Shown here one piece after another: positions 3,645 to 57,177 of a stretch of 64,000 bases of DNA. The stretch spans positions 62,001 to 126,000 of the forward strand of contig NW_002060956.1 in assembly GCF_000150275.1 (NCBI RefSeq). The letters run 5' to 3'. Under the pieces are notes generated by a model. That model was not told the origin of the DNA. It searched no databases and saw nothing but the letters and a program-made list of their open reading frames with translations. This stretch comes from Trichoplax adhaerens (lineage: Eukaryota; Animalia; Placozoa). Position numbers and translations under genes: made by a program. The number at the start of each line of letters is the position of its first letter. The stretch's first letter is position 1.

Positions 3645-4465
3645 TGTGACATAGCTGATCAAGAAAATCCAAAATTTGTAGAGATTTGGAACATTGTTAG
3701 ATCTTATACAAAGATAATACATGCACAACTATACTTTAGCCGAATACAGCTACTAAATACTCCTAGAAAGAATTACTAGAACAATTATAGTTGCCAGCTT
3801 TTATACTTTCCGTAGCATTCGCAGCTATTATCAGTATAGCAACATTCTACTATATTCAATATACAGTTGTTACAGAGCCATGCTCCGAAATATTAATTGC
3901 TATGTTAATTAAAATATCTCATTTAAATTGTTGTTTGCTCCAGTAGCTTATTAGATATTAATGTTAATTAATAAGTACTTATAATTGCCAAGGTATCATA
4001 GGATATGTATACTGTACAGTATAAGTCGCTATGTCAAGAATATTCGCAAGTGCATCATCGGCGTAGGCCGAGACTATTAAAAAGGCGAGCACTAGCTTAG
4101 CTGCTCAGTTCCATTTAGTCACTTGCAGGATCACTTGACTTTTATTGCTAAGAATATTCTTACGTTTTTCTTTAGTACATCTTACGACGAAGATTAACGT
4201 AAATAAAGTGATGTATTTAAACCTATTACTCATTAGTAGCTTATTTGTGTAGCTGAGAGTTAGTTCAACTACGATAGGTCCCTAAGTTAATTGGGAACAC
4301 GAGTACTAGTGAAGATAGTGTTTCAGACCCGTTTTCTAGTTACAAAGAAGATTTGTAACAACAGTATATTCAGATTATTATTAGGGATAACATTTTACAG
4401 TGAGCCATCACTAATCCAATCTGGAAACTACTACAGTATTTATGTAGACTTTATTTCTGCCATCA
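3645..4465 (-). mobile_element. Diverged, truncated solo LTR of family C, interrupted by a nested LTR
   Basis: Starts TGTGAC and matches 9706-10272 ('tatactttccgtagcattcgcagcta', 'actacagtatttatgtagac'). The right end is lost at the junction with the pseudogene exon. Confidence 0.75.
3868..4360 (+). mobile_element. Nested solo LTR, family B
   Basis: Perfect 7-bp inverted termini TGTTACA...TGTAACA and perfect TSD ACAGT (3863-3867, 4361-4365). TATA-like box ~4075 and AATAAA ~4202. Confidence 0.85.
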
Positions 4466-7017
4466 TAGTGGTGAGTAAAATACTATGATTATCAGACAAG
4501 GTAGTCGATAATAGCGAAAGATTTATTTCGCTAGTACGAATATCAGACAGGGTAGTAGGGAAGCATATACATCTAATTGACTAGAAGCAGCTGTTGCCGA
4601 AATAACATTATTACTAGTTAGCATAGATATCACAGACGAGGAAATTAATTGGTTAGTAGAAAAACTACAGCTTGCTGAACCTGTGCTAACTGTGGTCGGA
4701 TAAGAGTAAGAAACTTGACAAAAATTAATTGTCTTTAAGAAGTGCTTGCATAAAAAGTTTCACAGTCATTATCCTACCAGTGCACAAGATCAGCAAGTTT
4801 TGTAATGTGAAAACATCCAAAAGCTGAATATAATGGATAGGTCTACAACCAAAATTGTGAACTAGCTATAACGTCTTGAGCGTTCGCCAACCAATGATAA
4901 TTACCTAGCTGGTTGTTATCCATAGTATCTTTTAACCCAATCCAGTGACAAGTCTAGAGTATTAGTATATCATCTAGGCCATCATGAATTTCAGAGCTAT
5001 TATCAATTGTCAAATCGATACTAGGAAATGCCTGGCAAGCAGCTAGAGCACCACCGAAGGATTTCATGGCCCCAAAGCGCTTGAAATAATACTTATCGAT
5101 TCCTCTATCCAGTTAAGAGTTTGTCATTAGCCAAAATTTATAGTTTCTTAACAGTTTGTCATACTTGACATTTTGTTAATTAATAAAGATCAACTATGCT
5201 TTAGGTACTCTCCTACCATTTAATTTTGGAATACTGTGCATGATTTTCAGTATTGTAACATACTGGTATGTATCACTAATAAATAACTTTTTTCGATATT
5301 TAACTACAGTCTATGCAACTCCAAATTCGATATTTAGGTAAAGCAGCTGTAATTTTAGTACATCCCCTTTTCAACTGTAGCAAGCTAATCTTTTAAAACT
5401 GCAATCATATCATAGCTATCAAAAATATAATTGTTTCTTAGTCTGTATTGTAACTAATTTCAACCCATTTTTAAATATCATCGTATCTACGACAGTATAT
5501 CATCTCTAATACGTCATCTAGGACGATACTATGCAGTAATTATGTTTCTTTTCAATATTACTGTGCTCAAGGTCAAGCATTAGGTAATGGATAACATACT
5601 ATAAAGATGATGCTGACATCAGTATCAGGATCATAGTCAAGATCGAAAATAGGAAGAATCTGTATTTGATAGGCATCTTCCCTACAGTACAGCATTTAGC
5701 ATCGTTCATAGTTATATTTTCGTTAATCGTTTTAATAAGCATTATCGAATAGTTTCGCTAATAATCATCCTTTCAATTTTGAGTAAATTGATCAATTTAT
5801 ACAATCATCAATGATCTCATTACGTCAAGAAAATAAACTAATCACTGATATACACATCACTATTATTGGAAATTTAATCCATTGGTTACTTTACCTTCAA
5901 TCTAAAATCTATACTATTTATATCATCTATTGATTAATACTTTAACGAACCGTCAGCATTGATGGCAGTTAACGTTACATAAACGATCTAAAAAAGATAA
6001 AAAGATAATGATATCAATTCTGTCAAGACAAAAAGCTATAACAAAATTGATCGACCTAGCTGTCTATTACAAGCTATCGAAAAAATTCCATCAAAATTTC
6101 TTCTCTAAATACTCGATATAACGATTAGATAAAATAACTTCAGTAAAATGAATTTTAAGAGTAGGAATACAAGCAGTAAATAATGTCATCGGATACTGTA
6201 TAGTAATAGTAAAAGACTATAACTCTTTCATTACAAATCACGTTATTGATCAAAATTTGTCATAGAATCAAAGTAGAAAGATGTAATCTGTTAATTGAGT
6301 ATCTATATAACACGAATTAATATAATGTAAAGTTAAGAAAAAGAGCGTATAAAATGATTGCTTACCATGTGCTGTGATATATTTAATTTTATGTTATTGA
6401 TTTTATGAACGCACACTAGATAAAATTTCTTTACCCGTTAGTTTTTAATACATTTATATTAGTATTTTTGAGGTACTATATGATAATGGGTAACAGTAAT
6501 GTACAGTACATACCAAGCAAGCAATACATAAATCCTGAAAATTGGAAGGTATGTTATGTTGAACACAGATAAATTAAAGCAGCATAAGCCTTTAAAAGTG
6601 AACTAGTATCAAGTTGAGTACGATTAAAATGCCTGAAAGAAAATTGTATTTCACTACAATTCTTAAAGATATTCGGAAAGTTAAAAGATATATACAAGCA
6701 ATAAACTAGATGCGCATCACGATTATTTCATAAGAAAAAATTGGAATGAAATTGAGTAGATAGCTTCAAAGTATAATCTTGTCATATTTTCAATAGATAC
6801 TACTGCATCGCTATCAGTAACATACATTTGCAAGACGAGAAGATCTCTATAAGCGCTCATGCTTTCTTTCTGAAAATGTACTAGAATAGAATCGAAGTGT
6901 CAGCCTATACGACCAATATTCTTGTCCCAAGTGTCATAAAGGTATTTTAGTTAAAAATTCAAATAAAATGTAATATCGGAAATACGAAAGCATTAAAATT
7001 ACCAAAATGATTTTCGT
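4465..7017 (-). pseudogene. Truncated pseudogene of CTLD adhesion GPCR (sister of gene 2): exons 1-2 and 5' part of exon 3 only
   Basis: Exon 1 (7003-7017) has ATG changed to ACG. Exon 2 (~5951-5987) encodes IVYVTLTAINAD. The CTLD exon (ACQAFP, CHWIGLKD, YHWL) has in-frame TAG at 4954-4956, 4843-4845 and 4774-4776, and has lost the CESGW segment. All GAIN and 7TM exons are missing. Confidence 0.9.
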
Positions 7018-9705: not shown

Positions 9706-10272
9706 TGTGATATATACCGATCACGAAATTCCAACTTTTAGAAAAATAAGGGCTTTACTGAATCTTATACAAAGACTAACTACACATAGCTCTACTCTAG
9801 CCGAATACTACTACTAAAGACTTCTACAACGAACTAACTGAATAATCTAAAGTTGCATGCCTTTATACTTTTCGTAGCATTCGCAGCTACAATCCGCATG
9901 GCAACCTTTTACCTTATTTTACATATAGTTAAATTATTCTTAGTAACACTATTCTACTGCGGACCATCATTAATCCGAAATGGATACGACTACAGTATTT
10001 ACGTAGACATTATTCACACCAGCCAAAGTACAATGAATTAACCATATCCTAATATACGATTTGCAGTTCTATTTTTACCTATAACCTTATTAGTAACTCA
10101 ACACCTTACTGTACTGTATATAGTCATCTGTACTTTAGCATAGAGTCTATACCACTACAGTCTATAGTTATGGCTACCAAATATCTCTTAGGATAAAAAT
10201 AGAAGTTACGCTACAGTTCATTATACTAAACATGGCTAACAGTCTACAATCACAATACTAAATTACATTACA
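9706..10272 (-). mobile_element. Solo LTR, family C
   Basis: TGTGAT...ATTACA termini with perfect TSD ATGTG. Near-identical copy at 24804-25364. Minus-strand TATAAA at 9862-9867 and AGTAAA at 9754-9759. Confidence 0.9.
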
Positions 10273-10346
10273 ATGTGATATACGTAATATTCATAAGTAG
10301 AAATCCAAATTACGCTTCAAATGTCGTTCCTTTATCTCTGATTAAA

Positions 10347-13300
10347 TTAAAGATGAGTAACGACATCTGTCATATTGTTCGCTGACACGTCAGGATTATC
10401 GAACGTAGAGAGCAAGGTAGTAACACTAGATCGAAAAAGTTAAATCATAATTCGAGAGATTAATTATATATCTTAATCTGTGAGACAAATCAATATCGTC
10501 ACAATCAATAATGTCTAAACTAAAATATATATGAACAGGCTTCTGTATCTTCATTTAAGTGAAATATACAATGCAAAAAATACGTCTGTAGTAGTATTAC
10601 TCACCTGTTTGATGAATCCTTTCTTATAGCTATCAATTCAACATTAAGAACCAGAAGATTAATTTTAGATAATTATTTGAAATAAATACTTGCAAATTAA
10701 GGAACTAATAAATATTTCTTAACTAGTTATCAGTAGTATGGATAAGCTAATATTTGCTATAGTCTTAAAAATATGATCATTTTAAACCGATGATGGTCAT
10801 TTCTAAATGAATGAATGTATTTGAATCTGATACCTGCAGTCTTATTATGACTGAATGAACATCTTCCAATATCCCTACATTCATAACATGCATTATCTTG
10901 AGAAATTGGACGCACTGATATTTTAGCAGTACGACTGGAACGTGTATTTTCGAGCTAAGTTGAAACATTGTAGTTAGATAAATACGCATGTTAGAGTCCG
11001 ATAAATGAAAGATAAATAGATTTTACTCATTCTAATTTAGTGCCGTATTCACTAGCTAAGGATATAAGCAGTCTAATTTCATCCCGAAACTAAGTTATAT
11101 AGTAGTACAGAACCGGCTTATCTTAAGACATTAAAAATTAGTAACAAGTCGTACTCGAATATCTCTGCTACAATCGCCAGTAGAGCGCGTTGGAAAAATC
11201 ATGGAACCAAGTTTGAACTTCTTCCGCATGTAATCTTGCATCTAATAGTAATCGAATAGGTCATGATATAAAGCAACATAGCTACTATCAATTCTCATCA
11301 TTTACTGCTATTTTAATATTATGGCATGTATAACTGCTCTTAGTATGTTGTCGGCATTTAGAAAGTAACTTTAAAAGCTTTGCATTGATGATCGCCGATC
11401 TTTCACTTTACCATGCTATTATAATTATAATTTACGTTTGCATAAAAGAGATTAAAAACACATGATCAATAACTTACCTCGCGATCTTGAAAGCAGTGAA
11501 AGTAAAAGATCAACAATCCCTTTACACCAAGGAAAATAACAAAATCATTAATAGTGTTAAATAAACAGAACCAATATATGTGGCGGAGAGAAGGCTAACA
11601 AAAAAATAAGACTATTAGTGCTATGCAGGCTAAAAGCAAACCTGTGGACAGTTTAATATTGTAAACAAGTAAGCCAAGACAATATGGTTCGTAGCATAAT
11701 ACAAGATACCAAATATCCATGATATACCAAAGAGAAAGACCAAGGAAGTTACAGCTTTTATTCCGACTCTACATGAAATCGGTAAAAAGTACCTTGATTA
11801 GGCTATCATATTACTTGTTGCTATTCATCTATCTGGAAATACTTGCAGGTTTTATTAATAACAAAGTCAAGTTTTTTAACTTTTATATCTGAGACATTTT
11901 ATACATATTTTTACAGTTATAATATATATCATTATATTAGCATCTTAGCAATTAAATTCAGAAGGGACGAATTTTTTACCATACTTGAATTTTTGAATTT
12001 CGGACTTTCGGACCACAGCCTTAATAGAGAAAAGTGACCTAATAGCGGTGACTACTACCACCACGTTCCACTAGAACATCCGGTGAAGAAAATAATTATT
12101 TAAATTTCGCCTATGGGTTAGAATATTAGTAATACCGGCACTGATTATATCTAATAAATACGAGGGTAGTCAATCTTTTCATTAGCCAATGTTAGCCTAG
12201 ACTATGTCACAAACTATATAGCTAAAACTAATTAATTAATTGTAGATCAAAGACAGATTGATAATACTATAATTTTACAAATACTATACGAAGTAAATAT
12301 TAAATATTGGTTATCTAGTTGTTAAGATACATTTTACTGATATTTCAAGCCTTATATGAAATATAACTGTCTTCATTATCTCACCGCAACTATAAAAATA
12401 ATTGGACCTACAAAGAACCACATTTGAGTAGTAGCATTTCGAATCCAGCAACTGTCAAAAGCGATGTTCAATTAATTACATGTTAACAGATATATGAGTA
12501 CACGATCATCGTTTATTCATGCTAAAAACTTACTAATCTCGATTACGATAGGCATCAATCCCAGTAGATGCGGACACAGATACTACAATAGCTGGAGGCG
12601 CTAAGAGCCATTTATAAAAATAAATAAAAAATATTTCAATTGTCACAACATTTGTATTAATAAATGACCTATGATACAAATGTTAAACGAAATTACTTCT
12701 TACACTTTCTTAAATTAAATAGATTAACAACGATTATCGATAATCAATTTACTGTACTAACAGTAAATATTCAATTTTAAAATAATATTACAGCTACTGC
12801 GATTTACGGATATATCTTTTATACGCACCCCAGCCGAAAATAAAGTAAACCCATCGAAGGTTCGGATCCATATTTTTGCGTACGGAAGAAATTTTGTGCA
12901 AAAGTAGTATGGCTTCCATCATCATCCACATTAAACTAGCCAAGTAGAAGAAATGTAACGTAATCGCAATGATGGTGCAAATAAGCTACAGTTAAAGAAA
13001 GTCACAATTATTTCATTATAGCCAATTTTGAAAAATGCAGTTGACGCTCTTATAACAATTGTCATCGTATACTTTTAATATATCTAGAAATAACAATAAC
13101 GGTTATCACGTATACGTATATTTTATCATTAAGATATCTTAAAGTTATCATGATCAATCTCTCGTATGCTTAGTTTTTAAGTATCAATAATACGTACTTA
13201 GAGAACAGACAAATGCCGTACATTCAAAATATCATAAATTTTATCACCGGTATTCGAATATCTTGTAATTTTATACAAGGCATTATTTTATCTATCATCT

Positions 13301-16300
13301 TTCTATTAATGAGCAATTACCGGCAGGCTAGCTGCATTCATACCAGCTAAGAATCCACTAATACATATCACCATAGCAATAGCCAAATTTAGATGAATAA
13401 AGTTCTTTACTGCATGTAATTTCCTAGAATGAATTTTAAGAGAACTGTTCTGATTAAAAATTTATAGATAAATTGATATAATTACCGTACCGTAAAAATT
13501 GTAATTCTTTTCTAACTGTACCATCGCTTTCATTTTATTTACTTTAATGCAGTCGTCAATTACTATGATAAACTATAAAGTGACTAACACAACAATTCTA
13601 TCCAATAATGGATTTTTGCTTACTATTGTTTCACGACCGTTGTCACTAAATGACTTTTGCTCACTACAGTTCCTCTTACTTTCGTCAAGTAACACACTTT
13701 TGTATATGTCGAGAATATTTACTGGACATCTACGACTTAATGCATTCTTTTATAGATAAATACATAGTTTTATAATATTTAAGTAGTAATAATTAATATT
13801 TATGCAGATTTACTATAAATTGACTGATTTTTCAAGAAAGTTTGGGTCAGTTTTATCCTAGGAAGACTAGTCGTATTACTGTTTCTCGTGACGATCTCCT
13901 ATCGTCAGTATTTATAACCGTACTGTAGGTAGATGTCGGGGAGGACAACCTGACAGAAGACTTGCAGTGTTCAGTTTTCTGCAATAATTTAATTTTTTCG
14001 CCGTTACAAATCGAACGATCGTGTTATATTTTTAGGTGCTTCATATAGGATGAACTTCTAGAGTAATAAGAATTATAAATTCTCAACCTGTAAATTCTTG
14101 GAATGTGAGTATCAATCATGATTATCTTTAGTAGACTATAAAACGCTGTATTTGCGGATTATGCTTTGTCTCAAACTAGTAACTATAATATATTTGCTTA
14201 GAGGGCCTTATCTATAAGAATTAAGAATCAGAAGTTCAGTAACTTCAGCTATTCATCGCTTTTATTCTTTAGACTGACAAGAGATTCCAAATAGGAGCCC
14301 CTAACCTCTCCAACATCTTTAGAAAATCAGTAACAAGATATTCTAGACTAACAAAAGATAATCTTGAATAGATAGTTTCTGTTATAGCTCATATCAATAT
14401 CAAACCTTTTACTACAAAAGTTTATTACATAAAAATTAACTATCATACTCGTTACGGACCTGCTGCTAATCAATATTATTATCATCATCAGTAGGGCGAA
14501 TAGTGAAATAGAGTAGCCAATATAAGTGATGTAGCGAAGGTAGGTATCATGAGGTCCAGTTAATGCCTACAATCAAAACACGATCAATGATGTCGTAGTA
14601 CATTAAAATCAGTCACGTAATATTGTGATATGTTGTGACTGTCATTGTGTCTTCTAAATCAAGTGCATTGTTCGAAGAATAAATGTAACGAAAAAGATTA
14701 AATTTAAAAAAATTTATTTAGCTCTCAAGAATTTTTCATGAAAATGCAGTGTACTCGTAACAAGGATACGAAAGGTTACCGAAACTCCACTTCAAGGAAA
14801 ATTAATAATCTGCCGTAAAGATTTACTGCATGCAAAAGGCAAATAACTTTATATATTGATGTATATCTACATTATCCTTAAACTATTTGTATTTTACGAA
14901 TATGATTGTATTACAGCATCAATAAATATTTCTGGTTTACCTTGGAGCCTTGCATAAGGACGGCGAAACTTGTAAAATGAATGGTTGTGCAATGTACAGT
15001 GCTAGAATTATAACCTATCAAATCTGTTCCATACTGCGACCATTGTCTGCAAACATGTTTGCGATTTAATAAAGTTTGAGTAGTATAAATATTAACATGA
15101 TGAATCATGATCTTAATATTAAGAATTCCTTATTTTAATCTCAACTAAACGAAGCGTAAATGTTACGTTATCTATTTTAATAAACAGGTAAGTTAGATTG
15201 ATGTTAGTCACGAAATACGCTTGGTTATTACTAGCATAACATCGAAGTTAGATAGACAAATTATCTTACGTATTCTCCCAATATACACATCGATAGGGTG
15301 GATGAAGCTAATAGTAAAAAGGACGTTACAGTACTTAGTTAGATTTAATCAATGTTTAAAAGGATTAATAAATCGGTAATAATCAATTTAACTGACCTTT
15401 CGATATCTTATTTTAAGATAAAAATGAACGGGTAAAGTAAAATTTTTATCTTGGAGTGGATACATTGAGCAAGACAAGATATTGGAAATAATACTAGACG
15501 AAATATTTGAAATATTGCTTAACATGAAACATATTGAACACTACTAGCGAAGTTAAAGAAAAGAAATTTAAGGGTAATCGCTAGCATTATGTACGATTAT
15601 GCTACAGAGCATAATATATGCACAAAATATAATAAATCTAGAGATACCTGCTACTAGTTTCGTCAGTGTTATTTTTGGTCCAACTCTCTTCAGCACGATA
15701 CGATCTTACTACCACAGTAACAGTATCAGCTATAATATGTTAAAGTTACGAACAAATAGAAGGATATCAAATATTGTACGGTATTAAATTGAATAGATGT
15801 GATTTGTTTGCTTGCAGATTTACAATTTTTCGCATAAATTAAAATTAAACTGTGTAACTGACTAGTATATTATACAGAAAAAGGCAATTAACTTATGACA
15901 TTGCTTTTCATCTTATTTGAAGAAGATACGGGAATATGTAATTTCGAATACATAATATGACCGGAGATATTCGATACCTTGGCTAGAAAACAGAAATATT
16001 GATCTCGGAATTCTTACTTCTGCTTCGGACTCATTAGATAGTGATAACACTAGATTGATGATTGGAGTCGTATCCGATACGGAGATTGTATAAGCAATTA
16101 ATTCTAGTATATAATATGCGATGCAAATAGCATTAGGATACAAGACAGGATATAAAGTCAGCAACAGATGAGTTAATATAGTTTCTCTTTCGGTAAATTA
16201 TTATGAAAGAGTAGATTCAAAATATAACTATAGCAAAGTCCCACAAGTAGTGCAAGCAACAAACACTTAATTATCTATATTGCTAACAAGTAAGTGGAGA

Positions 16301-22300: not shown

Positions 22301-22631
22301 NNNNNNNNNNNNGAAAAATAATGCTTCTCTTGGGCCCTGAACCATAGCCCCTGAACAGTAAAATCCAACTTAAGGATGGCCGTAACATAAAATTTAGGCA
22401 GATATATTAAAGTGATAAGCTACGATTATGTACGTTATAAATATATGTACTGTAATGGAAGAGCAGGGACAAGTACACCCGTCGCGTAAAAATTATATCA
22501 AAATAGAATTGACAAGTGCGGTAAGCAAACATTTTACGGTATATAGCAGCAGTCATTCTTATTATAAATTTTAAATAAAGTCAAGATATTGATATAGCAT
22601 TCTACAATATACTTACCAAAATGATATCCAT
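10347..22631 (-). CDS. Adhesion GPCR gene 1 (CTLD - Ser/Thr stalk - GAIN/GPS - 7TM), ~25 exons, ~1270 aa
   Basis: Phase-consistent GT-AG exons: 22617-22631 MDIIL; 21445-21481 ILCITLRIAIAQ; 19385-20524 CTLD and stalk; 18571-19302; 18238-18366; 17757-17839; GAIN exons 17425 to ~15270; GPS 14941-15046 (HFTSFAVLM); TM1 ~14460-14566 (YITYIGYSIS); TM2 ~13321-13423 (FIHLNL); TM3 ~12828-12986 (LHFFYLASLMWMMMEA); ECL2 CWI ~12450; TM6-7 ~11642-11768; micro-exon 10605-10629; last exon 10347-10425 ending DVVTHL*. Confidence 0.9.
14941..15307 (-). other. GPS motif and Stachel exons of gene 1
   Basis: YRCVYWENT | QWSQYGTDLIGYNSSTVHCTTIHF/TSFAVLMQGSK. Confidence 0.9.
18575..19110 (-). repeat. Coding tandem repeat, 69-nt (23-aa) unit, ~8 copies, in gene 1 exon 4
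   Basis: SRQENPSTSSLS...SSGFSLTL units. 'ttttcttgcctact'-like motif recurs at 69-nt spacing (18594, 18663, 18732 ... 19077). Confidence 0.9.
20125..20524 (-). other. C-type lectin-like domain of gene 1
   Basis: CADGW...RCF...F-EDARIAC...YWIGLKD...YRW...CV...WRNSDC...YIC pattern. Confidence 0.9.
22228..22312. other. Assembly gap (N run) in intron 1 of gene 1
   Basis: Run of n characters. Confidence 1.
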
Positions 22632-24789: not shown

Positions 24790-24803
24790 CGTACATTGAC
24801 AAT

Positions 24804-42621: not shown

Positions 42622-42947
42622 GACCTCTAGATTCTTCATTTATATACGGCTACTATTTTCTACTGATAGCAAAATTTGCTCAAATTCCTAATCATATTCA
42701 AAGAGGGCTAATCATGTACTAAACTTCAACCTGTCATACTTTAAGAAGTATAAAATCAAGTTTGTATATGTAAAATTAAAATAGAATTTGTGCCCCTATA
42801 TCATTATCTCATAACTGAACAACAGTAGTTCGTCAGATAACTTAAAAATCAAGTTTTATTTGATTATAATAAACAGTACTTTGCAATATTAATCAAGGCA
42901 TCATTATTAAAAATATTAGTTGAAATGTATGAAACAAATATTGCAAC

Positions 42948-43436: not shown

Positions 43437-43464
43437 GCAACCATGATGTTTGATTGGATAGTTA

Positions 43465-43560
43465 CTAGTGCAAACTCCCGTCGCTTTGCTGACGGTTTAC
43501 GATAATGTGCTCATTTAACAGATAGTATTACCATTTGTCGTACTCAGTAGACCTGTCAGA
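43465..43560 (-). mobile_element. Second Helitron-like copy (inverted relative to 38932-39018)
   Basis: Reverse complement of 38932-39018 with a ~9-bp indel, including the hairpin and CTAG end. Confidence 0.7.
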
Positions 43561-47399: not shown

Positions 47400-50300
47400 T
47401 TAGCAATCGTCAATCTTGTTAATATCAGTAACTGACGCCTTAGAATTCTGTGATGAGTTTTCGACTCCAATGCTCCATCTGTCATAATTCAATTATTATC
47501 GATATTAGTTTTAACTTATTTAAAGTATGTGTAATATGAGTATTTTTAATGTTGATTATAATCTAAAATCAGATTGATCATCATATCTGCTAGTTCTATA
47601 CACATGAATTTAGTTAATTGCTAACCTACTAAATGAAAGGGTAAGCTTATATTGATCTAGATAGATAAATACGAAAATAATCATGAAAAGAAAAATTATA
47701 GTTAATTTCCCAATGTTTCGTTAACAAAGCCAATAAACACATGTTTCGCTGGCATATGGAGCTTTGATGTAAGGTCGAAGGTAAAACTGTAATACTGTAC
47801 ATGAATTCGCTATAGCAGTATACCTGGAGATAGAGTTTCACATACGATTGGACTGCTGACCAACTTATTCGAAGTAATTGATCCTCGTGTGCCATCTCTT
47901 TGACTTTCACAAGGAGCGTTTTTCGTTACTGAAGCAGGGGTAACTGGTATCTTAATGAAATGACTAATGTCTCTAGTCTAGATGAGAAAATAAAGTTACA
48001 AGTTTTCAATAAATAGATCAACTTTAACCATAAATAACCCAGCTAAATAAAAGTGAACATTTAAGTTAAAGCTACACTAAAGCTACTATAAAATGCAATA
48101 GAATGAATGGCACTAATATTTTAATAGAATAAAAAATTGTTTTCTATTTTATACCTTCAAATCTTTACTAGTATCCCCAGGATAGTGAGCAGGAAATATC
48201 GAAGTAGAAAATTTAAATTTTCGTCGAAGACATTCTTTTACCTAAAAACGTCGTAATAAAGTATTTACTATACGAGCGCATTAATAAAAGCTGCTATCTG
48301 TTTTTACAGCTTCTTATTAGCGCTGGATCCTTTCATTTTTTTGATGTTCAGAAATGTAAATTAAAAAAATATGAAAAATTCAATAGCTGGTTTATTCGAT
48401 CCAGCCTATGAAAAACTTACGTCACGATCGGTAAAGCAATGAAAGTAAAAGATTAAGAATCCCTATAATAGGCATACAATTTCATAATATTAGACAGCAC
48501 TGGTTTTAACAGTACGGTAGTTACATGATATATCCTAATTATGGCTAATTCGTGAAACTGTCGGCTAAAACTTACTTGTGGACTATTGATGATCGTAAAT
48601 AGATAGCCGAAAACAAGTTGATTAGTTGAGAAATATAAGATACCAAATATCCAGGATATCCCAAATAGGAAGATCAAAGAGGTTACGGCTTTTATTCCGA
48701 CTCTGTTTTATGAAAGAACTAATTAATATTCCTAATATTTCATTTTATTAGTTGATGGAATTCGCTTATATATTAACACACATAATTATAATTATATATA
48801 GCTGAAGTTCTAAATTTGAATAGTTGGGATCATATACTGCTGTAGTTTCTATCATTACTATTCTAATTCTTAAAAGTACTCATAGTACTTAAATAAAACC
48901 TAATGCAGAAGTTCGCTACTTCTTTGCTTCAATAAGTAATTTAGATTAGAGTTAATTGGTAAATCCATCCTTTTTTAATTAGTGATTTCATATCATCACT
49001 GCTGAAAAACTTGTAAATTAAATTACTATATTTTAAAGTTATCTATTAAGGTATGTAAGTTAATTTCTATATTCTACCGAATTACCACACTATAACTTTT
49101 CAGTCTCTATTCGATCATTATTCTAATGGAGTAGACTATTTATATTCATTTTTAGCTAATAATGGATTACTTAAGCTTTTGAAGTTCGGTCTTTTGAATC
49201 ATGGCTGTAATAGAGTAAAGGGATTTCATCGCAGTAACAGCAATAGCACAGTTACACTAAACATAAATTAGTATCAAAGAATATTGAAAATTAAATGGCA
49301 ATAATCTATGTTCATATACTATATTAAAACACTGATGAAAACAAGCAATTACTCTTTGAAACTATCAGTAATATAGACTGAAAATTAGATTTATAATTAT
49401 AAAGCAGCATTCATAAGCTACTAATCAGCAGGGCAATAAATCTTATGATGTGATACGTTACGCTAAATCAAGCTTTATGTTGTCGATTTAAGGAGATACA
49501 AACGCAAGGATTAATTATTTAATATTTTATAATCAAGCTTAAAATAAATCTTTGTACCGTAATTATTAACATGACAGGTCCAACGAAAAACCACATTTGA
49601 CCGCTTGCATTCTTTATCCAACAACTATGAATTCATTTTCAAAATTTTCAATCATGTTAATAACGTTTTATCTTCGTAAGTAACATAAACTAGAAGTATG
49701 TCGCCGCTTACTAATCTGAATTCTGATATGCATTTACATCCGTGCCAACTGATATCGCAACAATAACTGCTGGAGGAGCTATAAAAATGCGATTAAAGGA
49801 AATGGTTCATTATAATTATAGTTATAATCTTATAAGTAAACCACAGCAAAGGTAAGATGCATGTGAGTAATTGAAACATAAGCGAACCAATTCACTGTGA
49901 GTGATATTAACAAATATTGAACAAGTTGTCTTTAATACAGAATCAAGCATCAGTTACCATATTCTATCTGAAAATATCAGCTGGTATAAAGACATTCTGA
50001 CACTATTTCTCACAGCATCATAATTAATATGTAGGATAAAGACTTACACCATCCTAGTATAAAATAGTATCGCCTAAGTCTTAAATCTAGTTTTCGTCTC
50101 ATCGACGTGATTTTCTGTAGTAATAATATCGCTTCCATCATCATCCACATTAAGCTAGCTAAATAGAAAAAATGTAGACCGATGGCGATAGCAATACACA
50201 AAGCCTATTAGCCCATAATATGATAAATAAAACGTTAGCCATCTTGAAAATACTAGTGACTGCACTTTATATATAGAGAGAGAGAATAGTTAACAGTATA

Positions 50301-53300
50301 AAACTAAATATCATCGACTACAAAATATTTATCCTAATTTAGTAAGTAGCAATTTACCGGTATCTCAGTCGCATTGATACCAACTAAAAATCCACAAATA
50401 GATGTCGCCATAGCGATAGCCAAATTGAGATGGATAAAATTCTTGATGGAATATAATTTTCTGCGTTGAAAAATTCGTCAGAGATTGAATACATGATTGA
50501 AACTGCATTAATACTTAATCATCAACTTTAGTTAACATCATCGTTGGCAATCTGTATCACTTAATAAAAATTCGACTATCACATTGTAAGTTATCTATGG
50601 TATTGTTTCCACTAAAAAGAAATTGAAACTGCTGTACTTACATCACTATTTTATATAATTTAGCATTGACCTCGGTATCATAGGAATTAACAGACATTGA
50701 AGTACAGCAATATACAATAAGGATAGGTTGATTTTATGTACGTGACTATACGCGTATAATCTATTTCATAATTGATTCAATTTCAAGTAAAAACGACGTA
50801 CCTATTTCCAGTAAATATAATAATCATAATGATCAGAGATGACAAGGAAATAGTATAACCAACGTAGGTAAAACTGCGAAGAATACCATCATGAGTTGGA
50901 CTTAGCGCCTATTTAAAACGGCAAATAGAATTATTGAAATCCTCTCTTGGTTTATATAAGTAATTTTTCGTCCGATTTATGTATCCTTGAAGTATCATAA
51001 CAACTTCAGTAACGTACGCAAAGTCATTTACCAAGTTTGCCACTAAATTAGAATTAAGTTATAAATATTACCGAATTAACATTAATATTGAGACTATTTA
51101 AAGAAGGATACTTCTAAGATTGGATTGTTTGATTTAGCGTAAATGCAGAATTTCAAGTTTCAGATGATATACCTTTGAGCCTTGCATAATAACTGCAAAG
51201 CTCGTAAAATGGTTAGTCATACAACGGATGATAGTAGAATTAGAACTTTTTAATACTAGTCCATAATCTGACCAACAATTGGATCTAAAATATGAACATT
51301 GAAATATATCAGTTAATTAAGAAGCAGTGGTGGAAAGCAATCATTTCTTGAAGTGACTACTTTACAAGTTTACCCTCTCTCCCAATAAACACATTGATAA
51401 GCTGGTTTAACCTTGATAGAAATATTCATATGAGCTGTTAGTGCTAAACTGTTACGTTTATGTCATAAAATCATCATATGAGGATGAAAATATTATACGA
51501 ACTTGATAATGCTGTACTTTAAACTTGAGCTCAACTGGTATATTAAACTTTTGATGGTGGATTGGAATTACTGAACAAGAAACAATATCGGTGATAACAT
51601 TCGCAGACGCATTTGCAACGCTAGCAATGATTAATCATCGAAAGAGTTATTCAAGAATAAGAGCAGCCAATAGAAAGCGATTTTAGGTACTGCATGAAAA
51701 GTGTCAAGAATACCTGTGATTACTTCGATATTTTTGACTTCCATCTAACTTATAAAGCCGAATAACTATCGTGATCACCTCATCTAGAATTTTTATAGAA
51801 ACAAAATCATACATATGTATATATTTAAATTGGATAAATGTCCACATTGATTAATATGAATTTCATAAAACTATTGTGCAATTCGGTGTACGGCCATAAC
51901 AAAATTCATAAAACCAATTATTAGTCAGCAAGAAAAATTGTTTCTGAGATACTTGCTTTGTTAGCACAATACTTGGGTAAAAAATATGATGTATGGTAAA
52001 GTACTCTACCTAATTAAATAAGCAAGAAAGTAACTTTATCTTACCGTCATGAGAAAATTTAAATACAGACTTAGGAATGACAACTTCAGCAGTAGAACTA
52101 TCTGATATCGATAGTCTAAATGTAGTTACCGCTTTTATATCAGATACTGGAGCGGATTTAATAATCAATTCTAGAATAGACAAAGATGACGATAAAATTA
52201 CATGAACAACTTCAGTAGACAGAATTCAATTCTTAATAACTATTCTTTCTATGAACTATGCTGAAATTTAATATATCAAAGCTGAAAGCAGGCAGTTTAT
52301 ATCTTTAAGCTAAAATGAAAATATTATAACTTTTTGTAATCAATAACAATAAAATATGTAGCTGGGAGAGCCATAAAATAATGAACGCAATTAAATCTTA
52401 ACAACATAAGAGAAAACTTTTCTCTGCCTAAAATCCATTATCAGATCTAGCTACCTGAATCCAGATTGGATATGGTGAATTCACCGACAATTTTTGCTTT
52501 GTTCAATTCTTTAGCCAATTTAGCATCGTGTTGTTCAATTTCTTCTACAGTAGATGTGAAATTCTAAACGGTAAAATGGAGAAAAAAGCTCTCATTAAGA
52601 GCAGATAACTGCTAATTTTTTATATTTACTAAAACTAATCACTGGGATTCCATTAAATATATGGTCTCAATAATTAACAATCATAAAGTATGCCATACAT
52701 CATAAAAGTATGCCAATAAACTAAAATTTAACTCAATATGTAGCCTAACCTCGCTAGCTTCGCTGGTTGCCTTTGCCATAAGGCGATTATTTCTTGATCG
52801 TACTAGATTAATCTAGATCAAAGTAGAATTCAGAAATGGTATTATGGAATTTTTTATGCTTAATCATTGCTAGGCCAATCCTCTTACTGGTACTTTACTA
52901 TCTTGATTTCAATTGCTAATATTAATCTAATACAAGTAAAATAGTGTTTAAAATTGATATATTCAAATTAACGTCAACTCTATTTTTCCTGTATTTACTA
53001 AGGCTAACATTCTCTTCAAGCTTAGCTAGCGTCGACTTAAAAATTTTTGCGTGCCATGTTCAAATTACTTGCTCTAGCTTATGTCTTTATTTTCAATTTA
53101 AGTAATGAAATAATAGACCCTGTAAATGGTCGAGTAGTAACAAAACAATCGCATTCAAACTTGAAATGATGTTTTTCAATTTATGATACCGCTGTAGGAT
53201 GCATTATCGTCTCCAACGTCACTGACAAAATTGGTTCATAGCTTGTCCCTCAGTATAAACGTTTCTTTTTATTGAATAACTTATCTTGCGATATTTCTAG

Positions 53301-56300
53301 TACTTACCAAGTTAGAAGTTTTGTTTTGGCTTAGGGAATTAACAGCGTTGCCAGACGGATCTAGCGTCGTGCTTGGTGAGACTAAAATACGTAATTGAAC
53401 AACAATTATCCCAGGAGCAAATGGTAGTCAAAATTCAGAGTTACTTAATAAAGTACTTCAAAAATAGCATTATAACAACTTTGAATTCTTGTTAAGCTTC
53501 AATTCATCGTATCTATTAGTTTTCTTACCAACACTTGTACAGTCTAATAAACTATCCTACGACACGATCTGTTCAGGGACTACACAATTTATTATCAATT
53601 ATGCCCCTTGAAGCAGTGTGGGACGCAAAGATACGTCCATTCTACTGATGAGTGCATGATTTTTATATGCACCAAGAGTTCAGTAGCTAGAATGTACATA
53701 GATAAATTCCGATGCTAATGTATAATAACGATTTAAGTTCTGTAGACTTTAATCGTGTTCTATCCTGTTTTACTCCACATTCTACTAGAATTATCTTATC
53801 CATCAATACTACTACGGTATTCTTAGATTAATAAAAAATGCAATAAATAGGTTTTATCTCCATAGTTTTTATTGCACGACTGTCATACCTTCAATATACA
53901 CCACCACTATAACTAGCTAAAATAGCTACAAATAGTCGGGATATTTATGCTAGTATTTCAAGCCAATTAGACTTATGAGCCTTGCAAGGTTCGTAATTAG
54001 TCTAGTGCTACTGTAGAGATATTTTATTGACAATTAAGGAACATTCCCTCAGTACTTTCGGTCTATAGAGTTGTACAAGAATCGTTAGTTAAGGTTAACG
54101 TTATTTGCTAAAGCAAACTTGATAGGTTTTAGTTCGAGCCCATTAATTCAGTAATGGATGGGGAATTTCTTAATAAAGTGTGGCAATCAATTGGGGTTGG
54201 CTTAAAGCTATTTCTTCTAAAACCATCAATCTTATGCCTTACCTATAGGATATCTCTTGGACTGTTCCGATGGAGCACTAGTTATCGAAGCACTTTTATA
54301 TCGATAGACTGATTCTTTAAAGACGCAGCTATGATGACCATTGGATGCCGAACATGAGCTATAATCTTTAACTTTTTCATTGTCTAAATTGAAGGATTGA
54401 TTAGCTTAATGTTACTATTGTAGGATAGAAAAGATAGAGGGGAAAATGGCAAGAAATACAGTTATCTCTAAGATAAAATTATTAAGAATAAATACGAGAT
54501 ATGACCATATTGGGATCATCTGTACATAAGTAGTAAGTTTACCGTTCCTGTAAAGTTTCATATCTATTCTATTCTAATGTTTGAGAGAGTAGACCTAACA
54601 CCATGATGTTTTTCAATAAAGCTTAAACAGCCTCACCTGTTAATATAAGATCAATCATATCTTCAATTGTCGAATCCAAATGAGCAGAAGGTGCTACTGG
54701 ATGAATATTAGAAGTTGTAGTATCTGCAAGGATACTAATGACATCGGTATCCGCGGAAATAGACGATTTAGTGCTATGTGTAGATGTTGTAGATACTTCC
54801 AAGGAGGTAATACTCAAGGTAGATCTCGGAGATGAATAGGATATTAAAAAGTTTGTGAGTGCATTATGTTTTACAGTATTATCAAAATTGGCGAAGTTCT
54901 GTGGATCTATCAATCGATGATATTCTGCTGTTAATGATCGATCCGAAGAAGAATGAAAGAGAATACTAGAACTTAAAGTGTTATAATATCGAGCGTAATC
55001 TTGACTCGATAAAGTCCTATCATTGGAATTAACTTGGTAAGTACTGAATTGGGATGAATGATGAACATTTGATATTAGCTTATGGCTGCTACTAACGAAT
55101 CCTAAATCTTGTCTACTTGTTGATAATAGACTTGAGCCAACTGATAAAACTCCATCTTTAGGATGCGTCCTAGAATTGGATAAATTAATATGATTTACAG
55201 AGCGTAATGCTCGTTCATCGTTTTGATATGTTCTAGTGCTCCGATCCAATGCCAGTTTATGCTTGATATTGAAAGTCTTAAGACGGCTAAAATCGTTGAT
55301 AATCAATGATGAAGAAAATATAGCGATGCTTTCATGATCTGCTGTTGAAGATAAAGATAATACTTTATGAAATGATGTAGTTGAAATAATATCAGAAGAT
55401 GGGCTGCTAGAAATGGCAGCGGCAAATAGAGCATTAGCTCTACCTGGTGGTTCTTCACTAGGCTGCTCCATAGTAGCTGACGACAATGGACGTAAATCAT
55501 TCGATGTTAACGATGTTGACTTACTTACTATAGTTTTAGACAGTTTAAACAGTTCAGAATTAGGAGACATTTTTTCGTAATTTGAAAAGGGTGATAAAAC
55601 GGATATTCCACGAGTTGATATAACCTCAATATTGTTAGAATCCTGCCTGTTTATGGAAGACAGCAAAGAATGCATGTTCATTGAGCTGGTGCGGATATCA
55701 TCATTATTATCTGAATGGATAAATGATGTATGTAGTATATTAATGTTATTAATCATGTTTGAGGATAAAACCACATTAGTTTGCTTGTCTAACATTGGTG
55801 ATAAAAATATAGATAAATCGTTTTTTGTTGAAGTATTGTAGGTTTTCGTGAAAACAGTCCGATGTTCTAAATTATTTGCATCGTTAGCAGAAATAGAAGA
55901 ACTGCTAGTTACCACTGTTGAAGGTAAGCTTTCAACTGCAGTTGCAAAAATACTATTCTGATCCGAGCTGATAATATGATTTACCGATTGCTCATAATCA
56001 GAAATATTGTCGCTGGAGCTAAAATCAGATGTACTTTTCGAGGGCGCCGACGATAAACCATCAGTATGAAAATTTTCTACATGACTAGAAGTAAAATGAA
56101 AGGACATTTCTTCAGAGTTCCAACTAGTTGCAGCAGTTGAAGTAAATGATACAAGTGCAAGTTGATTATCTCCTATTGATTTCAACTCAGTAGAGAGAGA
56201 TGAAGCCAATAAACTATGGATAGAAGTTAATTCTAAATTATATCTCAAACTGCTCTCGTCAGTCGATGGCCAAAGTCCTGTAATAGTATTAGAATCACTA

Positions 56301-57177
56301 CTTGCCATGACTGTAAGTGTATCAGTCAAGAATGATGAAGAATCTCTGATATAGCCGGAGTTGATGCTAGACATAATATCAATCCAATCAGTTGTAGATG
56401 ATATTGATTCTGAATTACTGTTTCCAGTGGAAGATATAACAGAATAATACTCTGAAGGTAAATGTTGATATCCACTCGTTATAGTAGTACTAGAACTCAA
56501 TTTGAATAGTAAATTGGATGATAATGATAGATCTTCCATTAGATAATTCGCGGAAGTATCACTACCTAGATTACTGAATGTAATAGTAACCTGCTCTGTG
56601 AATAAATCATGATATATACTTATCACCGAATCGCTAGAGGTAAATTCGAATAACTGATCTAATGATGACGATGGTGCATGGTTGATTGAACTAGTAGCAA
56701 GATCATTGCTATCTTTTGCGGCGGAAGTAGTCAGCGAAGAAGAGGATGATACAACGTTTGATATTGGAGGTCTTTCACAAAAGTATCGAAATCTATTAGT
56801 GCAACGGTAATCACGCCAAGTGAATTCTGATGAAATAAAAGACTTAACCACAGCTACACATCGATATGACGACAGACTAGGATAGCCATTCTTCCAAAAT
56901 TGCGAACCACTTGTCACATTTTGGCCATTTAGCAGCCATTGATAATCACTTAATACATTATTGCCCTGTAGATCCTTTAGCCCAATCCATCGAAAATTCA
57001 TAGTTCCAGTGGCCAAATTGTTTAAACCTTCATGAATTTCTATCGTATTATCAACAGCTAAATCGCCACCGGGAAATTTTTGGCAATCTGCTCGAGCATC
57101 ATCAAAGTTTTTCCAAGACCAGTAGTTGCTGTAGAAACAACGATTGCCTAACAGTGTCCAACCTGCTTCACATTGAC
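47400..57177 (-). CDS. Adhesion GPCR gene 3 (CTLD - very long Ser/Thr stalk - GAIN/GPS - 7TM), ~1500 aa; signal-peptide exons lie further right
   Basis: Exons: 54637-57177 CTLD and stalk (847 codons); 54243-54383; 53308-53381; GAIN exons ~52812 to 51374; GPS 51173-51284; TM1 ~50802-50908; TM2 ~50358-50460 (FIHLNL); TM3 ~50048-50204; TM6-7 ~48576-48702; last exon 47400-47478 ending KIDDC*. Confidence 0.88.
51173..51411 (-). other. GPS motif and Stachel exons of gene 3
   Basis: YQCVYWERG | SNCWSDYGLVLKSSNSTIIRCMTNHF/TSFAVIMQGSK. Confidence 0.9.
56765..57177 (-). other. C-type lectin-like domain of gene 3
   Basis: CEAGW...RCF...FDDARADC...RWIGLKD...YQW...CV...WRDYRC...YFC. Confidence 0.9.

What the first reader, a model, noticed from the sequence alone, without database searches (positions are those of the whole stretch)
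4465..57177. Tandem, diversifying array of C-type-lectin / mucin-stalk adhesion GPCRs: candidate variable recognition-receptor system
Seen: three spliced genes and one pseudogene on the same strand with matching intron positions and phases. Each full gene joins one N-terminal CTLD, a ~560-780 aa Ser/Thr stalk, GAIN/GPS and a 7TM. The 7TM and Stachel are well conserved, while the CTLD loops, stalks and tails are strongly diverged. Established: a single CTLD on a mucin stalk with no HormR domain is not the layout of the standard vertebrate aGPCR subfamilies, although invertebrate aGPCRs carrying CTLDs are known. Birth-and-death tandem arrays with variable tips are typical of immune, self/non-self or chemosensory receptor families. 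Inference: a lineage-specific family coupling variable surface recognition to force-triggered G-protein signalling.
Basis: partly seen in the sequence, partly recalled or inferred. Interest (0 to 1): 0.85.

Follow-up and report, generated by a model that had tools for sequence, protein, structure and literature searches.

The report
Placozoan lectin-tipped adhesion GPCR gene array

Summary
The window is Trichoplax adhaerens scaffold C1401:62001-126000. On the minus strand lie three intact paralogous genes: A (about 47.8-57.2 kb), B (28.8-38.9 kb, TRIADDRAFT_60121) and C (10.3-20.5 kb, TRIADDRAFT_60120). A dead CTLD fragment lies at 4449-5100.

Each gene encodes one long-form CTLD, a 560-780 aa Ser/Thr stalk, a GPS (HF^TSFAVLM) and a 7tm_2 domain. 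Exon lengths and phases are identical from GAIN to tail.

The array is larger than the window. Three more genes lie below it on C1401 and one at the end of C1403, giving seven intact members of one clade.

The assembly gap (22228-22312) is intergenic, and its flanks are collinear with a paralogous segment.

- Birth-and-death is real. A two-gene block was duplicated, and one copy lost about 11 kb.
- The clade is lineage-specific. Nearest non-placozoan relatives share about 30-35% identity.
- dN/dS is below 1 in every domain.
- CTLDs are 96-99% identical between Trichoplax H1 and H2 orthologues.
- Part of the 7TM conservation is a gene-conversion tract.
- The CTLD lacks the EPN/QPD and WND sugar-binding motifs.

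CTLD-headed adhesion GPCRs of placozoans, read as pattern-recognition receptors, were published by Kamm et al. 2019. An earlier follow-up in this scan (s1-749471, other DNA of this genome) reached the same family. No RNA evidence could be obtained.

The parts
4449..5100 (-). Pseudogene: remnant of a B-like CTLD exon (CTLD plus the first ~100 aa of stalk). It has 3 in-frame stops and 2 frameshifts, the first Cys pair is lost, and the rest of the gene is deleted.
   Evidence: tblastn of gene B exon 1 gives 58/52/51% identity in three different frames. DNA block 4466-5177 ~ 38197-38932 and flanks 5303-9507 ~ 39237-44247, while 3158-3644 ~ 26591-27071. The equivalent of B 27071-38197 is therefore missing.
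10350..21481 (-). Gene C (TRIADDRAFT_60120). Signal-peptide mini-exon 21481-21446. CTLD+stalk exon 20524-19385. Stalk exons 19302-18571, 18366-18238 and about 17842-17757. GAIN/GPS exons 17425-17363, 17160-17052, 16103-15978, 15729-15648, 15493-15397, 15307-15270, 15046-14941. 7TM exons 14566-14460, 13423-13321, 12985-12829, 12600-12534, 12451-12385, 12070-11985, 11768-11642, 11519-11478. Tail exons 11241-11155, 10954-10834, 10629-10605, 10425-~10350.
   Evidence: Spliced alignment; P0005 and P0002 map here; Lectin_C and 7tm_2 hits.
18586..19122 (-). Tandem 69-nt (23-aa) Ser/Thr repeat, 7.8 copies, inside stalk exon 2 of gene C.
   Evidence: TRF; translation.
12000..13000 (-). Gene-conversion tract between gene C and paralogue G3 (TM3-TM5 exons and their introns).
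   Evidence: Non-coding identity is 0.939 here against 0.798 elsewhere in the locus. 7TM dS is 0.11 against CTLD dS 0.46.
22228..22312 (.). Assembly gap, intergenic (upstream of gene C, downstream of gene B).
   Evidence: Flanks 22009-22221 and 22313-22995 align collinearly with the region upstream of G3. No exon of any model touches it.
28849..38865 (-). Gene B (TRIADDRAFT_60121). CTLD+stalk exon 38865-37297. Stalk exons 37073-36864, 36632-36489, 36091-35943 (plus an optional 27-nt exon 35713-35687). GAIN/GPS exons 35592-35530, 35333-35225, 34881-34756, 34503-34422, 34287-34188, 34101-34064, 33817-33712. 7TM exons 33298-33192, 32513-32411, 31597-31441, 31158-31092, 31011-30945, 30638-30553, 30330-30204, 30072-30031. 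Tail exons 29820-29734, 29503-29383, 29173-29146, 28933-28849. A candidate signal-peptide exon lies at 39354-39321.
   Evidence: P0003 maps at 95-100%. Spliced alignment. The TM2 exon 32513-32411 is skipped in the database model but conserved in all paralogues.
37467..37952 (-). Tandem 51-nt (17-aa) Ser/Thr repeat, about 9 copies, inside the stalk part of gene B exon 1.
   Evidence: TRF.
47854..57177 (-). Gene A. CTLD+stalk exon 57177-54637 (846 codons). Stalk exons about 54383-54243 and 53381-53308. GAIN/GPS exons 52812-52750, 52563-52455, 52170-52045, 51783-51714, 51620-51503, 51411-51374, 51284-51173. 7TM exons 50908-50802, 50460-50358, 50204-50048, 49778-49712, 49624-49558, 49256-49171, 48702-48576, 48462-48421. 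Tail exons 48241-48155 and 47977-47854. The last exon(s) and the 5' signal-peptide exon are unresolved.
   Evidence: Spliced alignment. Phase-consistent GT-AG chain. Lectin_C, GPS, 7tm_2.

Best explanation
**What it is.** The window contains three intact members and one dead remnant of a Trichoplax-specific clade of adhesion (class B2) GPCR genes. The clade has seven intact genes: six in tandem on scaffold C1401 and one at the end of C1403. It arose by tandem and block duplication. It belongs to the published placozoan group of CTLD-headed Secretin/Adhesion GPCRs.

**The protein.** Each protein has a signal peptide on separate mini-exon(s) and one long-form C-type-lectin-like domain without the canonical Ca2+/sugar residues. 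A 560-780 aa Ser/Thr-rich, Pro-poor stalk follows, partly built of tandem repeats and presumably O-glycosylated. Then come a small GAIN/GPS region with an intact H-x-T cleavage triad and a class-B2 7TM.

**Likely mechanism (inferred from what is established for adhesion GPCRs, not shown here).**
1. The receptor is self-cleaved at HF^T.
2. The stalk holds the CTLD far from the membrane.
3. Binding of the tip to an unknown ligand, plus traction or shear, displaces the N-terminal fragment.
4. This exposes the tethered agonist TSFAVLM, which activates G-protein signalling.

**Evolution (shown).**
- A two-gene unit (C-like + B-like) was duplicated. One B-like copy then lost about 11 kb and decayed.
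- The tip and tail diverge fastest and the 7TM slowest, all under net purifying selection.
- At least one gene-conversion tract homogenises the 7TM of the youngest pair.
For: - **Organism and gene identity:**
- **Domains:** Lectin_C, GPS and 7tm_2. There is no HRM or other domain.
- **Conserved exon-intron structure in seven paralogues:**
- **GPS and Stachel:** the H-F-T triad and TSFAVLM / TSFAVIM / TNFAVLM / TSFAILM, plus class-B2 TM6/TM7 motifs aligned to a nematode latrophilin-like protein (hhalign probability 99.96%).
- **Closest solved 7TMs:** ADGRD1, ADGRL3/2 and ADGRE5, E 1e-30 to 1e-25.
- **GAIN-B/GPS-like features of residues 690-915 of P0003:**
- **Stalk composition and repeats:**
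- **Clade definition:** 56-71% identity in the TM3-4 exon within the clade, next paralogue 49%. Long CTLD+stalk open frames occur only at these seven loci.
- **Block duplication and deletion:**
- **Rates:**
- **Conversion tract:**
- **Prior description of the family:** PMC6321704.
Against: - There is no transcript evidence.
- The 5' exons of A and B and the last exon(s) of A are unresolved.
- Pfam GAIN (PF16489) does not match. The AlphaFold model was useless (mean pLDDT 29), so the GAIN fold is only indirectly supported.
- The GPS has two cysteines, not the usual four.
- Cleavage, glycosylation, ligand and G-protein coupling are all untested.
Confidence: 0.85

Rival explanations
1. This is a variable immune or self/non-self recognition system. 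In this reading the paralogous CTLD tips are diversified by positive selection to recognise different microbial or foreign patterns, with GPCR and arrestin signalling or endocytosis downstream.
For: - The family has expanded: at least 89 Lectin_C hits, many next to 7tm_2/GPS hits on the same scaffolds, and 28 CTLD-7TM genes in H2.
- Birth-and-death is visible.
- CTLD variation is concentrated in the C-terminal third.
- In the young pair C-G3 the C-terminal half of the CTLD has dN 0.262, about equal to non-coding divergence of 0.236. The N-terminal half has dN 0.112. Amino-acid differences are 27/70 against 12/66 (Fisher p=0.013).
- The closest solved CTLDs are REG3A/PAP antibacterial lectins (E about 1e-8).
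Against: - dN/dS is below 1 in every pair and domain.
- There are only seven members in this clade.
- H1-H2 orthologues differ at 9 of 530 CTLD residues, against 47 of 1135 in the stalk.
- The EPN/QPD and WND motifs are absent.
- There are no expression or binding data.
Confidence: 0.25
2. These are mainly mechanosensors or substrate-contact sensors in the manner of ADGRG4. In this reading the glycosylated stalk is the functional element, acting as a shear or traction antenna on the ciliated epithelium. The CTLD would serve as an anchor or dimerisation knob rather than a specific pattern detector, and paralogues would differ mostly in stalk length and expression.
For: - The layout matches ADGRG4: a single globular tip, a long Ser/Thr stalk, then GAIN-7TM. 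ADGRG4 is proposed to be a shear-force sensor (PMC10687090).
- Stalk length varies (566-780 aa) and the stalk contains tandem repeats.
- The Stachel and cleavage triad are intact.
- The CTLD has no sugar-binding motif.
Against: - The CTLD is kept under purifying selection in every paralogue. This argues that the tip has a specific partner.
- The stalk is Pro-poor (1-3%), unlike classical mucin domains.
- No functional data exist.
Confidence: 0.3
3. The CTLD/stalk exons and the GAIN-7TM exons are separate transcription units. In this reading a secreted or membrane mucin-like lectin gene sits next to an orphan aGPCR gene, and prediction programs have fused them.
For:
- Database models of these genes contain errors: a skipped TM2 exon in P0003, intron-derived inserts in P0004 and P0005, and an H2 orthologue of gene C split into two models.
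Against: - In all seven paralogues the first exon ends at a phase-1 GT donor. It is followed, after introns of 80-400 bp, by phase-compatible open exons down to the GAIN region.
- No stop codon is available at the end of the stalk exons other than past the donors.
- The GAIN-7TM part has no signal peptide or start of its own.
- The same CTLD-to-7TM spacing recurs at many other loci in the genome.
Confidence: 0.05

Closest known systems
Placozoan CTLD-containing Secretin/Adhesion GPCRs (Kamm et al. 2019, BMC Genomics 20:5, PMC6321704)
   Same: This is the same family. The paper reports that 28 of 36 CTLD receptors of Trichoplax sp. H2 carry a 7tm_2 domain and proposes CTLD recognition linked to GPCR signalling or endocytosis. 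TrispH2_011071 (orthologue of G1) is in their 7tm_2 list. TrispH2_011671 (orthologue of gene C) is in their CTLD list.
   Different: I found no mention in the text I read of three things: the single-CTLD plus long Ser/Thr-stalk subgroup, its array anatomy, or its evolutionary rates. TrispH2_011671 is filed there as 'single TM'. The likely cause is that the H2 gene is split into two models (011671 + 011672) on a 16-kb contig.
ADGRG4 / GPR112 (vertebrate)
   Same: It has one globular domain at the very tip, a very long mucin-like Ser/Thr stalk, then GAIN and 7TM. It is proposed to be a force sensor (PMC10687090).
   Different: The tip is a pentraxin-like domain, not a CTLD. A HormR domain is present, the stalk is about 2000 aa, and the 7TM belongs to group G. 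In the window genes the closest solved 7TMs are ADGRD1, ADGRL and ADGRE, and HormR is absent. The resemblance is convergent in layout, not orthology.
ADGRD1, ADGRL1-4 (latrophilins) and ADGRE5: closest solved 7TM domains
   Same: Class B2 7TM, a Stachel of the TNFA(V/I)LM type, and a GPS.
   Different: Identity is only about 30%. No family is clearly closest, with E-values of 1e-30 to 1e-25 for three families. The ectodomains differ (PTX, RBL/olfactomedin/HormR, EGF).
REG3A / PAP and other group VII CTLDs: closest solved CTLDs
   Same: A single long-form CTLD with the WIGL core and six cysteines.
   Different: The match is weak (E about 1e-8). REG3 proteins are small secreted lectins. No functional inference is justified.
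CTLD-bearing aGPCRs outside placozoans (one amphioxus receptor cited by Kamm et al.; a nematode latrophilin-like protein, P0010)
   Same: CTLD and GAIN/7tm_2 in one protein.
   Different: In those proteins the CTLD is one of several ectodomains (for example with a Gal_Lectin domain). Identity to the window genes is 28%. They are not orthologues.

Membership tests
Adhesion GPCR (class B2) | 7tm_2 seven-helix domain | tested here: met
   PF00002 scores above its cut-off in exons of A, B and C and in P0003 (E 1e-28). Seven hydrophobic segments and the TM6/TM7 motifs align to a latrophilin-like protein.
Adhesion GPCR (class B2) | GPS motif with H-x-S/T cleavage triad followed by a hydrophobic Stachel | tested here: met
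   PF01825: P0003 E 9e-8, P0001 E 3e-6, and window 51188-51301. H-F-T followed by SFAVLM or a variant is present in all seven genes. There are only two cysteines instead of four.
Adhesion GPCR (class B2) | GAIN domain fold upstream of the GPS | tested here: inconclusive
   There is no PF16489 hit. The AlphaFold model has mean pLDDT 29, although its secondary structure shows two long helices followed by about ten strands. Language-model features are nearest to GPS/GAIN-B clusters (score 0.97).
Adhesion GPCR (class B2) | Autoproteolysis and tethered-agonist activation | not testable with these tools
   This needs protein biochemistry and signalling assays.
C-type lectin-like domain (CTLD) | Lectin_C profile match, WIGL core and long-form cysteine pattern | tested here: met
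   PF00059 gives E 1e-7 to 1e-10, above its cut-off. The cysteines and WIGL are invariant in seven paralogues.
C-type lectin (Ca2+-dependent sugar binding) | EPN or QPD motif plus WND motif (Ca2+ site 2) | tested here: not met
   The aligned positions read YPx, CPS or NPV, and WRD, WRN, WIN or WCD. Assignment of these positions rests on my knowledge of the canonical CTLD alignment.
Mucin-like domain | High Ser/Thr content, tandem repeats, high Pro content, dense O-glycosylation | tested here: inconclusive
   S+T is 33-40%, and tandem repeats of 17 and 23 aa are present. Pro is only 1-3%. Glycosylation is not testable here.
Placozoan CTLD-GPCR family of Kamm et al. 2019 | CTLD and 7tm_2 in one placozoan gene; orthologue in their catalogue | tested here: met
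   Gene models P0003 and P0005 carry both domains. H2 orthologues TrispH2_011071 and TrispH2_011671 are listed in Dataset S3A. Transcript-level proof was not obtained.
Diversifying (arms-race) receptor family | dN/dS above 1 in the recognition domain, or rapid change between close species | tested here: not met
   CTLD dN/dS is 0.16-0.71. H1-H2 CTLD difference is 1.7% against 4.1% in the stalk. Only the C-terminal half of the CTLD in the pair C-G3 reaches the non-coding rate. Site-wise tests were not possible with seven saturated sequences.

The most novel reading that the evidence does not exclude
After each duplication the binding face of the CTLD (its C-terminal third) changed at or above the neutral rate and was then frozen. 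The seven receptors would then be a small set of tip-specific, stalk-mounted force-gated sensors, each tuned to a different ligand (microbial, algal or self). That would be a non-bilaterian recognition system that reads binding through traction on a mucin tether rather than through kinase or TIR signalling.
Probability: 0.2. Interest if true: 0.6.

Novelty: already known. Interest (0 to 1): 0.3.

Why it matters
Placozoans lack nerves and muscles and feed on biofilms, so their surface receptors are the main way they read the outside world. A family that couples a lectin-like tip to an adhesion-GPCR force switch is a plausible route for sensing food, microbes or the substrate.

The family and that idea are already published. 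This analysis adds the following:
- a precise map of one array, with corrected exon models;
- the definition of a seven-gene single-CTLD/long-stalk subgroup;
- evidence for block duplication, deletion and gene conversion;
- the finding that there is no signal of diversifying selection.

This is useful for anyone who picks candidates for binding or signalling assays, but it is not a new kind of system.

Tried and rejected

I re-ran it using the session's own files only.
- AlphaFold2 on P0008 with an 8-row alignment gave mean pLDDT 29, which is useless. No fold search was made.

**Searches that found nothing**
- Pfam GAIN did not match.
- Pfam on ten intergenic open frames and Rfam on the whole window found nothing.
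- A search of papers for the TRIADDRAFT gene numbers found none.

**Signal-peptide exons**
- The hydrophobicity-plus-donor scan for signal-peptide exons was too noisy.
- Only the mini-exon of gene C was located, through P0005.
- B has a candidate. A is unresolved.

**Spliced models**
- The joined spliced models of A, B and C were built and compared only inside local scripts.
- They were not sent to any search or folding tool. Database searches used single exons by reference or database proteins by id.

**Not done**
- A formal 7TM phylogeny against named bilaterian aGPCR families was not made, because their sequences were not on hand.

**Rejected reading**
- I rejected the reading that the gap at 22228-22312 breaks a gene.


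Full report
**Where the window comes from**

The window is G000:C1401:62001-126000 of a 105.6-Mb, 1414-contig, roughly 30% G+C genome. Protein matches identify it as Trichoplax adhaerens. P0003 is TRIADDRAFT_60121 and P0005 is TRIADDRAFT_60120. Both lie on a 1,898,518-bp scaffold and map onto the window at 95-100% identity.

**The observation**

All coding features are on the minus strand.

- Three large open exons carry a Lectin_C domain above the Pfam cut-off: 19332-20546, 37256-38869 and 54626-57256.
- 7tm_2 and GPS matches lie 5-9 kb downstream of each.
- An all-against-all comparison of minus-strand open frames shows three collinear sets of conserved small exons.

I wrote a protein-to-genome spliced aligner (GT-AG, all three phases). 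I checked it on gene B with its own database model. Projected on all copies, it gives the same exon series from the start of the GAIN region to the tail: 63, 109, 126, 82, 100, 38, 106, 107, 103, 157, 67, 67, 86, 127, 42, 87, 121 nt, with identical phases. Gene A differs only by 70+118 for 82+100, 112 for 106 and 124 for 121.

The database model of gene B skips the TM2 exon (32513-32411), which every paralogue has.

For gene A my first alignment was poor in the stalk. A direct enumeration of acceptors and donors then gave a clean chain with the same phases as in B and C:
- 57177-54637, ending at a phase-1 donor GGTGAG;
- about 54383-54243, phase 1 to 1;
- 53381-53308, phase 1 to 0;
- 52812-52750, exactly 63 nt.

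**The 5' ends**

The CTLD exon is not the first coding exon. In all six C1401 copies an AG acceptor lies at the same place, two codons before the first cysteine, in phase 1. In four copies a stop codon lies just upstream in frame. For gene C the database model supplies a signal peptide whose hydrophobic part is a mini-exon at 21481-21446. B has a candidate at 39354-39321. A has an in-frame ATG in the same open frame, and its true start is unresolved.

**The protein**

- *CTLD.* It is of the long form, with the WIGL core and six conserved cysteines. The positions of EPN/QPD and WND read YPx, CPS or NPV, and WRD, WRN, WIN or WCD. It is a C-type-lectin-like fold without the canonical Ca2+/sugar site. 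That positional assignment rests on my knowledge of CTLD alignments.
- *Stalk.* It is about 566 aa in B, 580 aa in C and 780 aa in A. S+T is 33-40% and Pro only 1-3%. It contains tandem repeats of 17 aa in B and 23 aa in C.
- *Other domains.* No HormR or other domain is detected in the database models.
- *GPS.* It reads ...HC-x3-HF^TSFAVLM, with variants TSFAVIM, TNFAVLM and TSFAILM. The histidine and threonine of the cleavage triad and the hydrophobic tethered agonist are intact.
- *7TM.* The profile of the clade aligns from the last GAIN strands through TM7 to a nematode latrophilin-like protein (hhalign probability 99.96%), including the TM6 and TM7 motifs. The closest solved 7TMs are ADGRD1, ADGRL3/L2 and ADGRE5, with similar E-values of 1e-30 to 1e-25.
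- *GAIN fold.* Support is only indirect. There is no PF16489 hit. The AlphaFold model has pLDDT 29, though it shows two long helices followed by about ten strands. Language-model features are closest to GPS/GAIN-B clusters.

**The pseudogene and the history of the array**

The fragment at 4449-5100 aligns to the first 230 residues of gene B exon 1 in three different frames. It has three in-frame stops and has lost the first cysteine pair.

DNA self-comparison of 146 kb of the scaffold gives these correspondences:
- contig 46.8-62.9 kb (paralogue G3 and its upstream region) matches window 10.3-24.5 kb (gene C and its upstream region);
- window 1.8-3.6 kb matches 26.1-27.1 kb (3' flank of B);
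- window 4.5-9.5 kb matches 38.2-44.2 kb (CTLD exon of B and its upstream region).

A two-gene unit (C-like + B-like) was therefore duplicated as a block. In one copy the equivalent of B 27.1-38.2 kb, about 11 kb, was deleted.

Below the window lie three further intact genes: G3 (TRIADDRAFT_60119), G2 (60118) and G1 (60117). A 7TM fragment lies at contig 7.3 kb. A seventh intact gene, G0 (TRIADDRAFT_59938), lies at the very end of scaffold C1403 and has the same exon structure. Nothing related lies in the 20 kb above the window.

**The gap**

The 85 N at 22228-22312 lie upstream of the signal-peptide mini-exon of gene C and 6.5 kb downstream of the last exon of gene B. The flanks 22009-22221 and 22313-22995 align in order and orientation with the region upstream of G3, where 156 bp correspond to the gap. 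No reading frame depends on it.

**How special is the clade?**

The TM3-4 exon of gene B finds the six other clade members at 56-71% identity. The next Trichoplax paralogue is at 49%, and many others are at 33-46%.

Genome-wide there are at least 89 Lectin_C, 86 7tm_2 and 52 GPS matches. Many lie side by side on the same scaffolds (C1387, C1405, C1411 and others). Long open frames that join a CTLD to a stalk occur only at the seven clade loci.

Against 1.84 billion representatives, the matches above 40% identity are all from Trichoplax, by name or by mapping onto scaffold C1401. The next ones are 28-36% identical. Those I looked up were other Trichoplax receptors or came from a centipede, hemichordates and mussels, under the names ADGRD1-like, latrophilin-like and ADGRL4-like.

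The clade is therefore lineage-specific as far as this collection shows. Other placozoan genera may not be in it.

**Is the tip diversifying?**

| Domain | Pairwise aa identity | Youngest pair C-G3 | dN/dS (NG86) | Median terminal branch |
|---|---|---|---|---|
| CTLD | 44-55% | 71% | 0.16-0.71 | 0.84 |
| GAIN | 35-61% | 85% | 0.18-0.36 | 0.32 |
| Stachel+7TM | 62-73% | 96% | 0.11-0.24 | 0.23 |
| Tail | 27-45% | 71% | 0.29-0.93 | not built |

 dS is saturated for most pairs. The branch lengths come from star-like trees in which only C+G3 is supported.

Variation within the CTLD is concentrated around columns 50-60 and in the last 40 columns.

For the pair C-G3, non-coding divergence is K=0.236. 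The CTLD N-terminal half has dN 0.112 and the C-terminal half dN 0.262. That is at the non-coding rate, but not significantly above it.

Against a continuing arms race, Trichoplax H1 and H2 orthologues compare as follows:
- CTLD: 9 of 530 residues differ;
- GAIN: 9 of 756;
- 7TM: 1 of 359;
- stalk: 47 of 1135.

Part of the 7TM conservation is not due to selection. Between C and G3 a tract at 12.0-13.0 kb, introns included, is 94% identical against 80% elsewhere. dS is 0.11 in the 7TM against 0.46 in the CTLD. This is the signature of gene conversion.

**Comparison with what is known**

Kamm et al. 2019 (PMC6321704) reported that 28 of 36 CTLD receptors of Trichoplax sp. H2 are Secretin/Adhesion GPCRs. 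They called the combination unique and proposed CTLD-mediated pattern recognition linked to GPCR signalling and endocytosis.

Their list contains TrispH2_011071, the orthologue of G1. It also contains TrispH2_011671, the orthologue of gene C, under 'single TM'. That placement is probably an artefact: the H2 gene is split into 011671 and 011672 on a 16-kb contig.

A 2024 preprint notes that certain peptidergic metacells express one or two CTLD-GPCRs.

In layout the closest analogue is vertebrate ADGRG4. It has a pentraxin-like tip, a mucin-like stalk of about 2000 aa, then HormR-GAIN-7TM, and is proposed to be a shear sensor (PMC10687090). This is a resemblance of design, not membership.

An earlier follow-up of this scan on another piece of the same genome (s1-749471) also filed its array under the published lectin-headed family.

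**Limits**

- The joined spliced models were used only in local scripts.

**Verdict**

The main claim rates as 'already known', and interest is modest.

Noticed in passing
window 9706-10273 and 24804-25365: A 568-bp interspersed repeat, 95% identical between the two window copies. It has more than 700 first-look candidates genome-wide, and 39 scored full-length copies elsewhere in the genome are 92-94% identical. This looks like a young non-autonomous mobile element. Further copies lie elsewhere in the array (contig 16.5 kb, 40.3 kb).
   Followed up: partly
window 1303-1739 and 61688-62126 (inverted); also 41991-42622 and 42945-43436: Other repeats of 430-630 bp, 90-97% identical to copies elsewhere on the scaffold, some of them inside introns of array genes. 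They might have mediated the rearrangements.
   Followed up: no
window 23824-24070: A perfect tandem duplication of a 123-bp unit (2.0 copies, 100% identity) in the intergenic region between genes C and B.
   Followed up: no
gene B, window 32513-32411; gene C: Database gene models contain errors. TRIADDRAFT_60121 skips the TM2 exon and uses a wrong acceptor for the next exon. TRIADDRAFT_60120 contains an insert of about 23 aa in the GAIN region that my model splices out.
   Followed up: yes
Trichoplax sp. H2 proteins P0004, P0002, P0157: The H2 model P0004 is G3-like from the CTLD to TM2 and C-like from TM5 to the end. The switch lies inside the C/G3 conversion tract. The 5' part of the gene C orthologue sits on a separate 16-kb contig, split into TrispH2_011671 and TrispH2_011672. 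This is either an assembly collapse in H2 or a real unequal crossover.
   Followed up: partly
G000:C1403:1931237-1931385 (L010): In paralogue G0 the exon carrying the GPS and Stachel may be shorter. The H2 orthologue model reads HFTSFA followed directly by ALTGP, which would truncate the tethered agonist. My aligner needed a dubious 5-nt exon here.
   Followed up: no
G000:C1401:~910 (L001) and C1401:7261-7386: Two pieces lie at the start of the scaffold. One is a signal-peptide-like mini-exon nearly identical to that of the H2 orthologue of G0. The other is an isolated fragment homologous to the 127-nt TM6-7 exon. The array probably runs across the C1403/C1401 scaffold junction and holds further remnants.
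   Followed up: no
window 38450-38865 (CTLD of gene B): The CTLD of gene B has several extra cysteines not found in the other six paralogues (in the TCH, TCP and WCDYGCDYDC stretches). These may form additional disulfides.
   Followed up: no
G000:C1401:27200-27386 (L003), paralogue G2: The 127-nt TM6-7 exon of G2 is interrupted by about 60 nt, and its end reads differently from all other copies. This is a possible small insertion or the beginning of decay.
   Followed up: no
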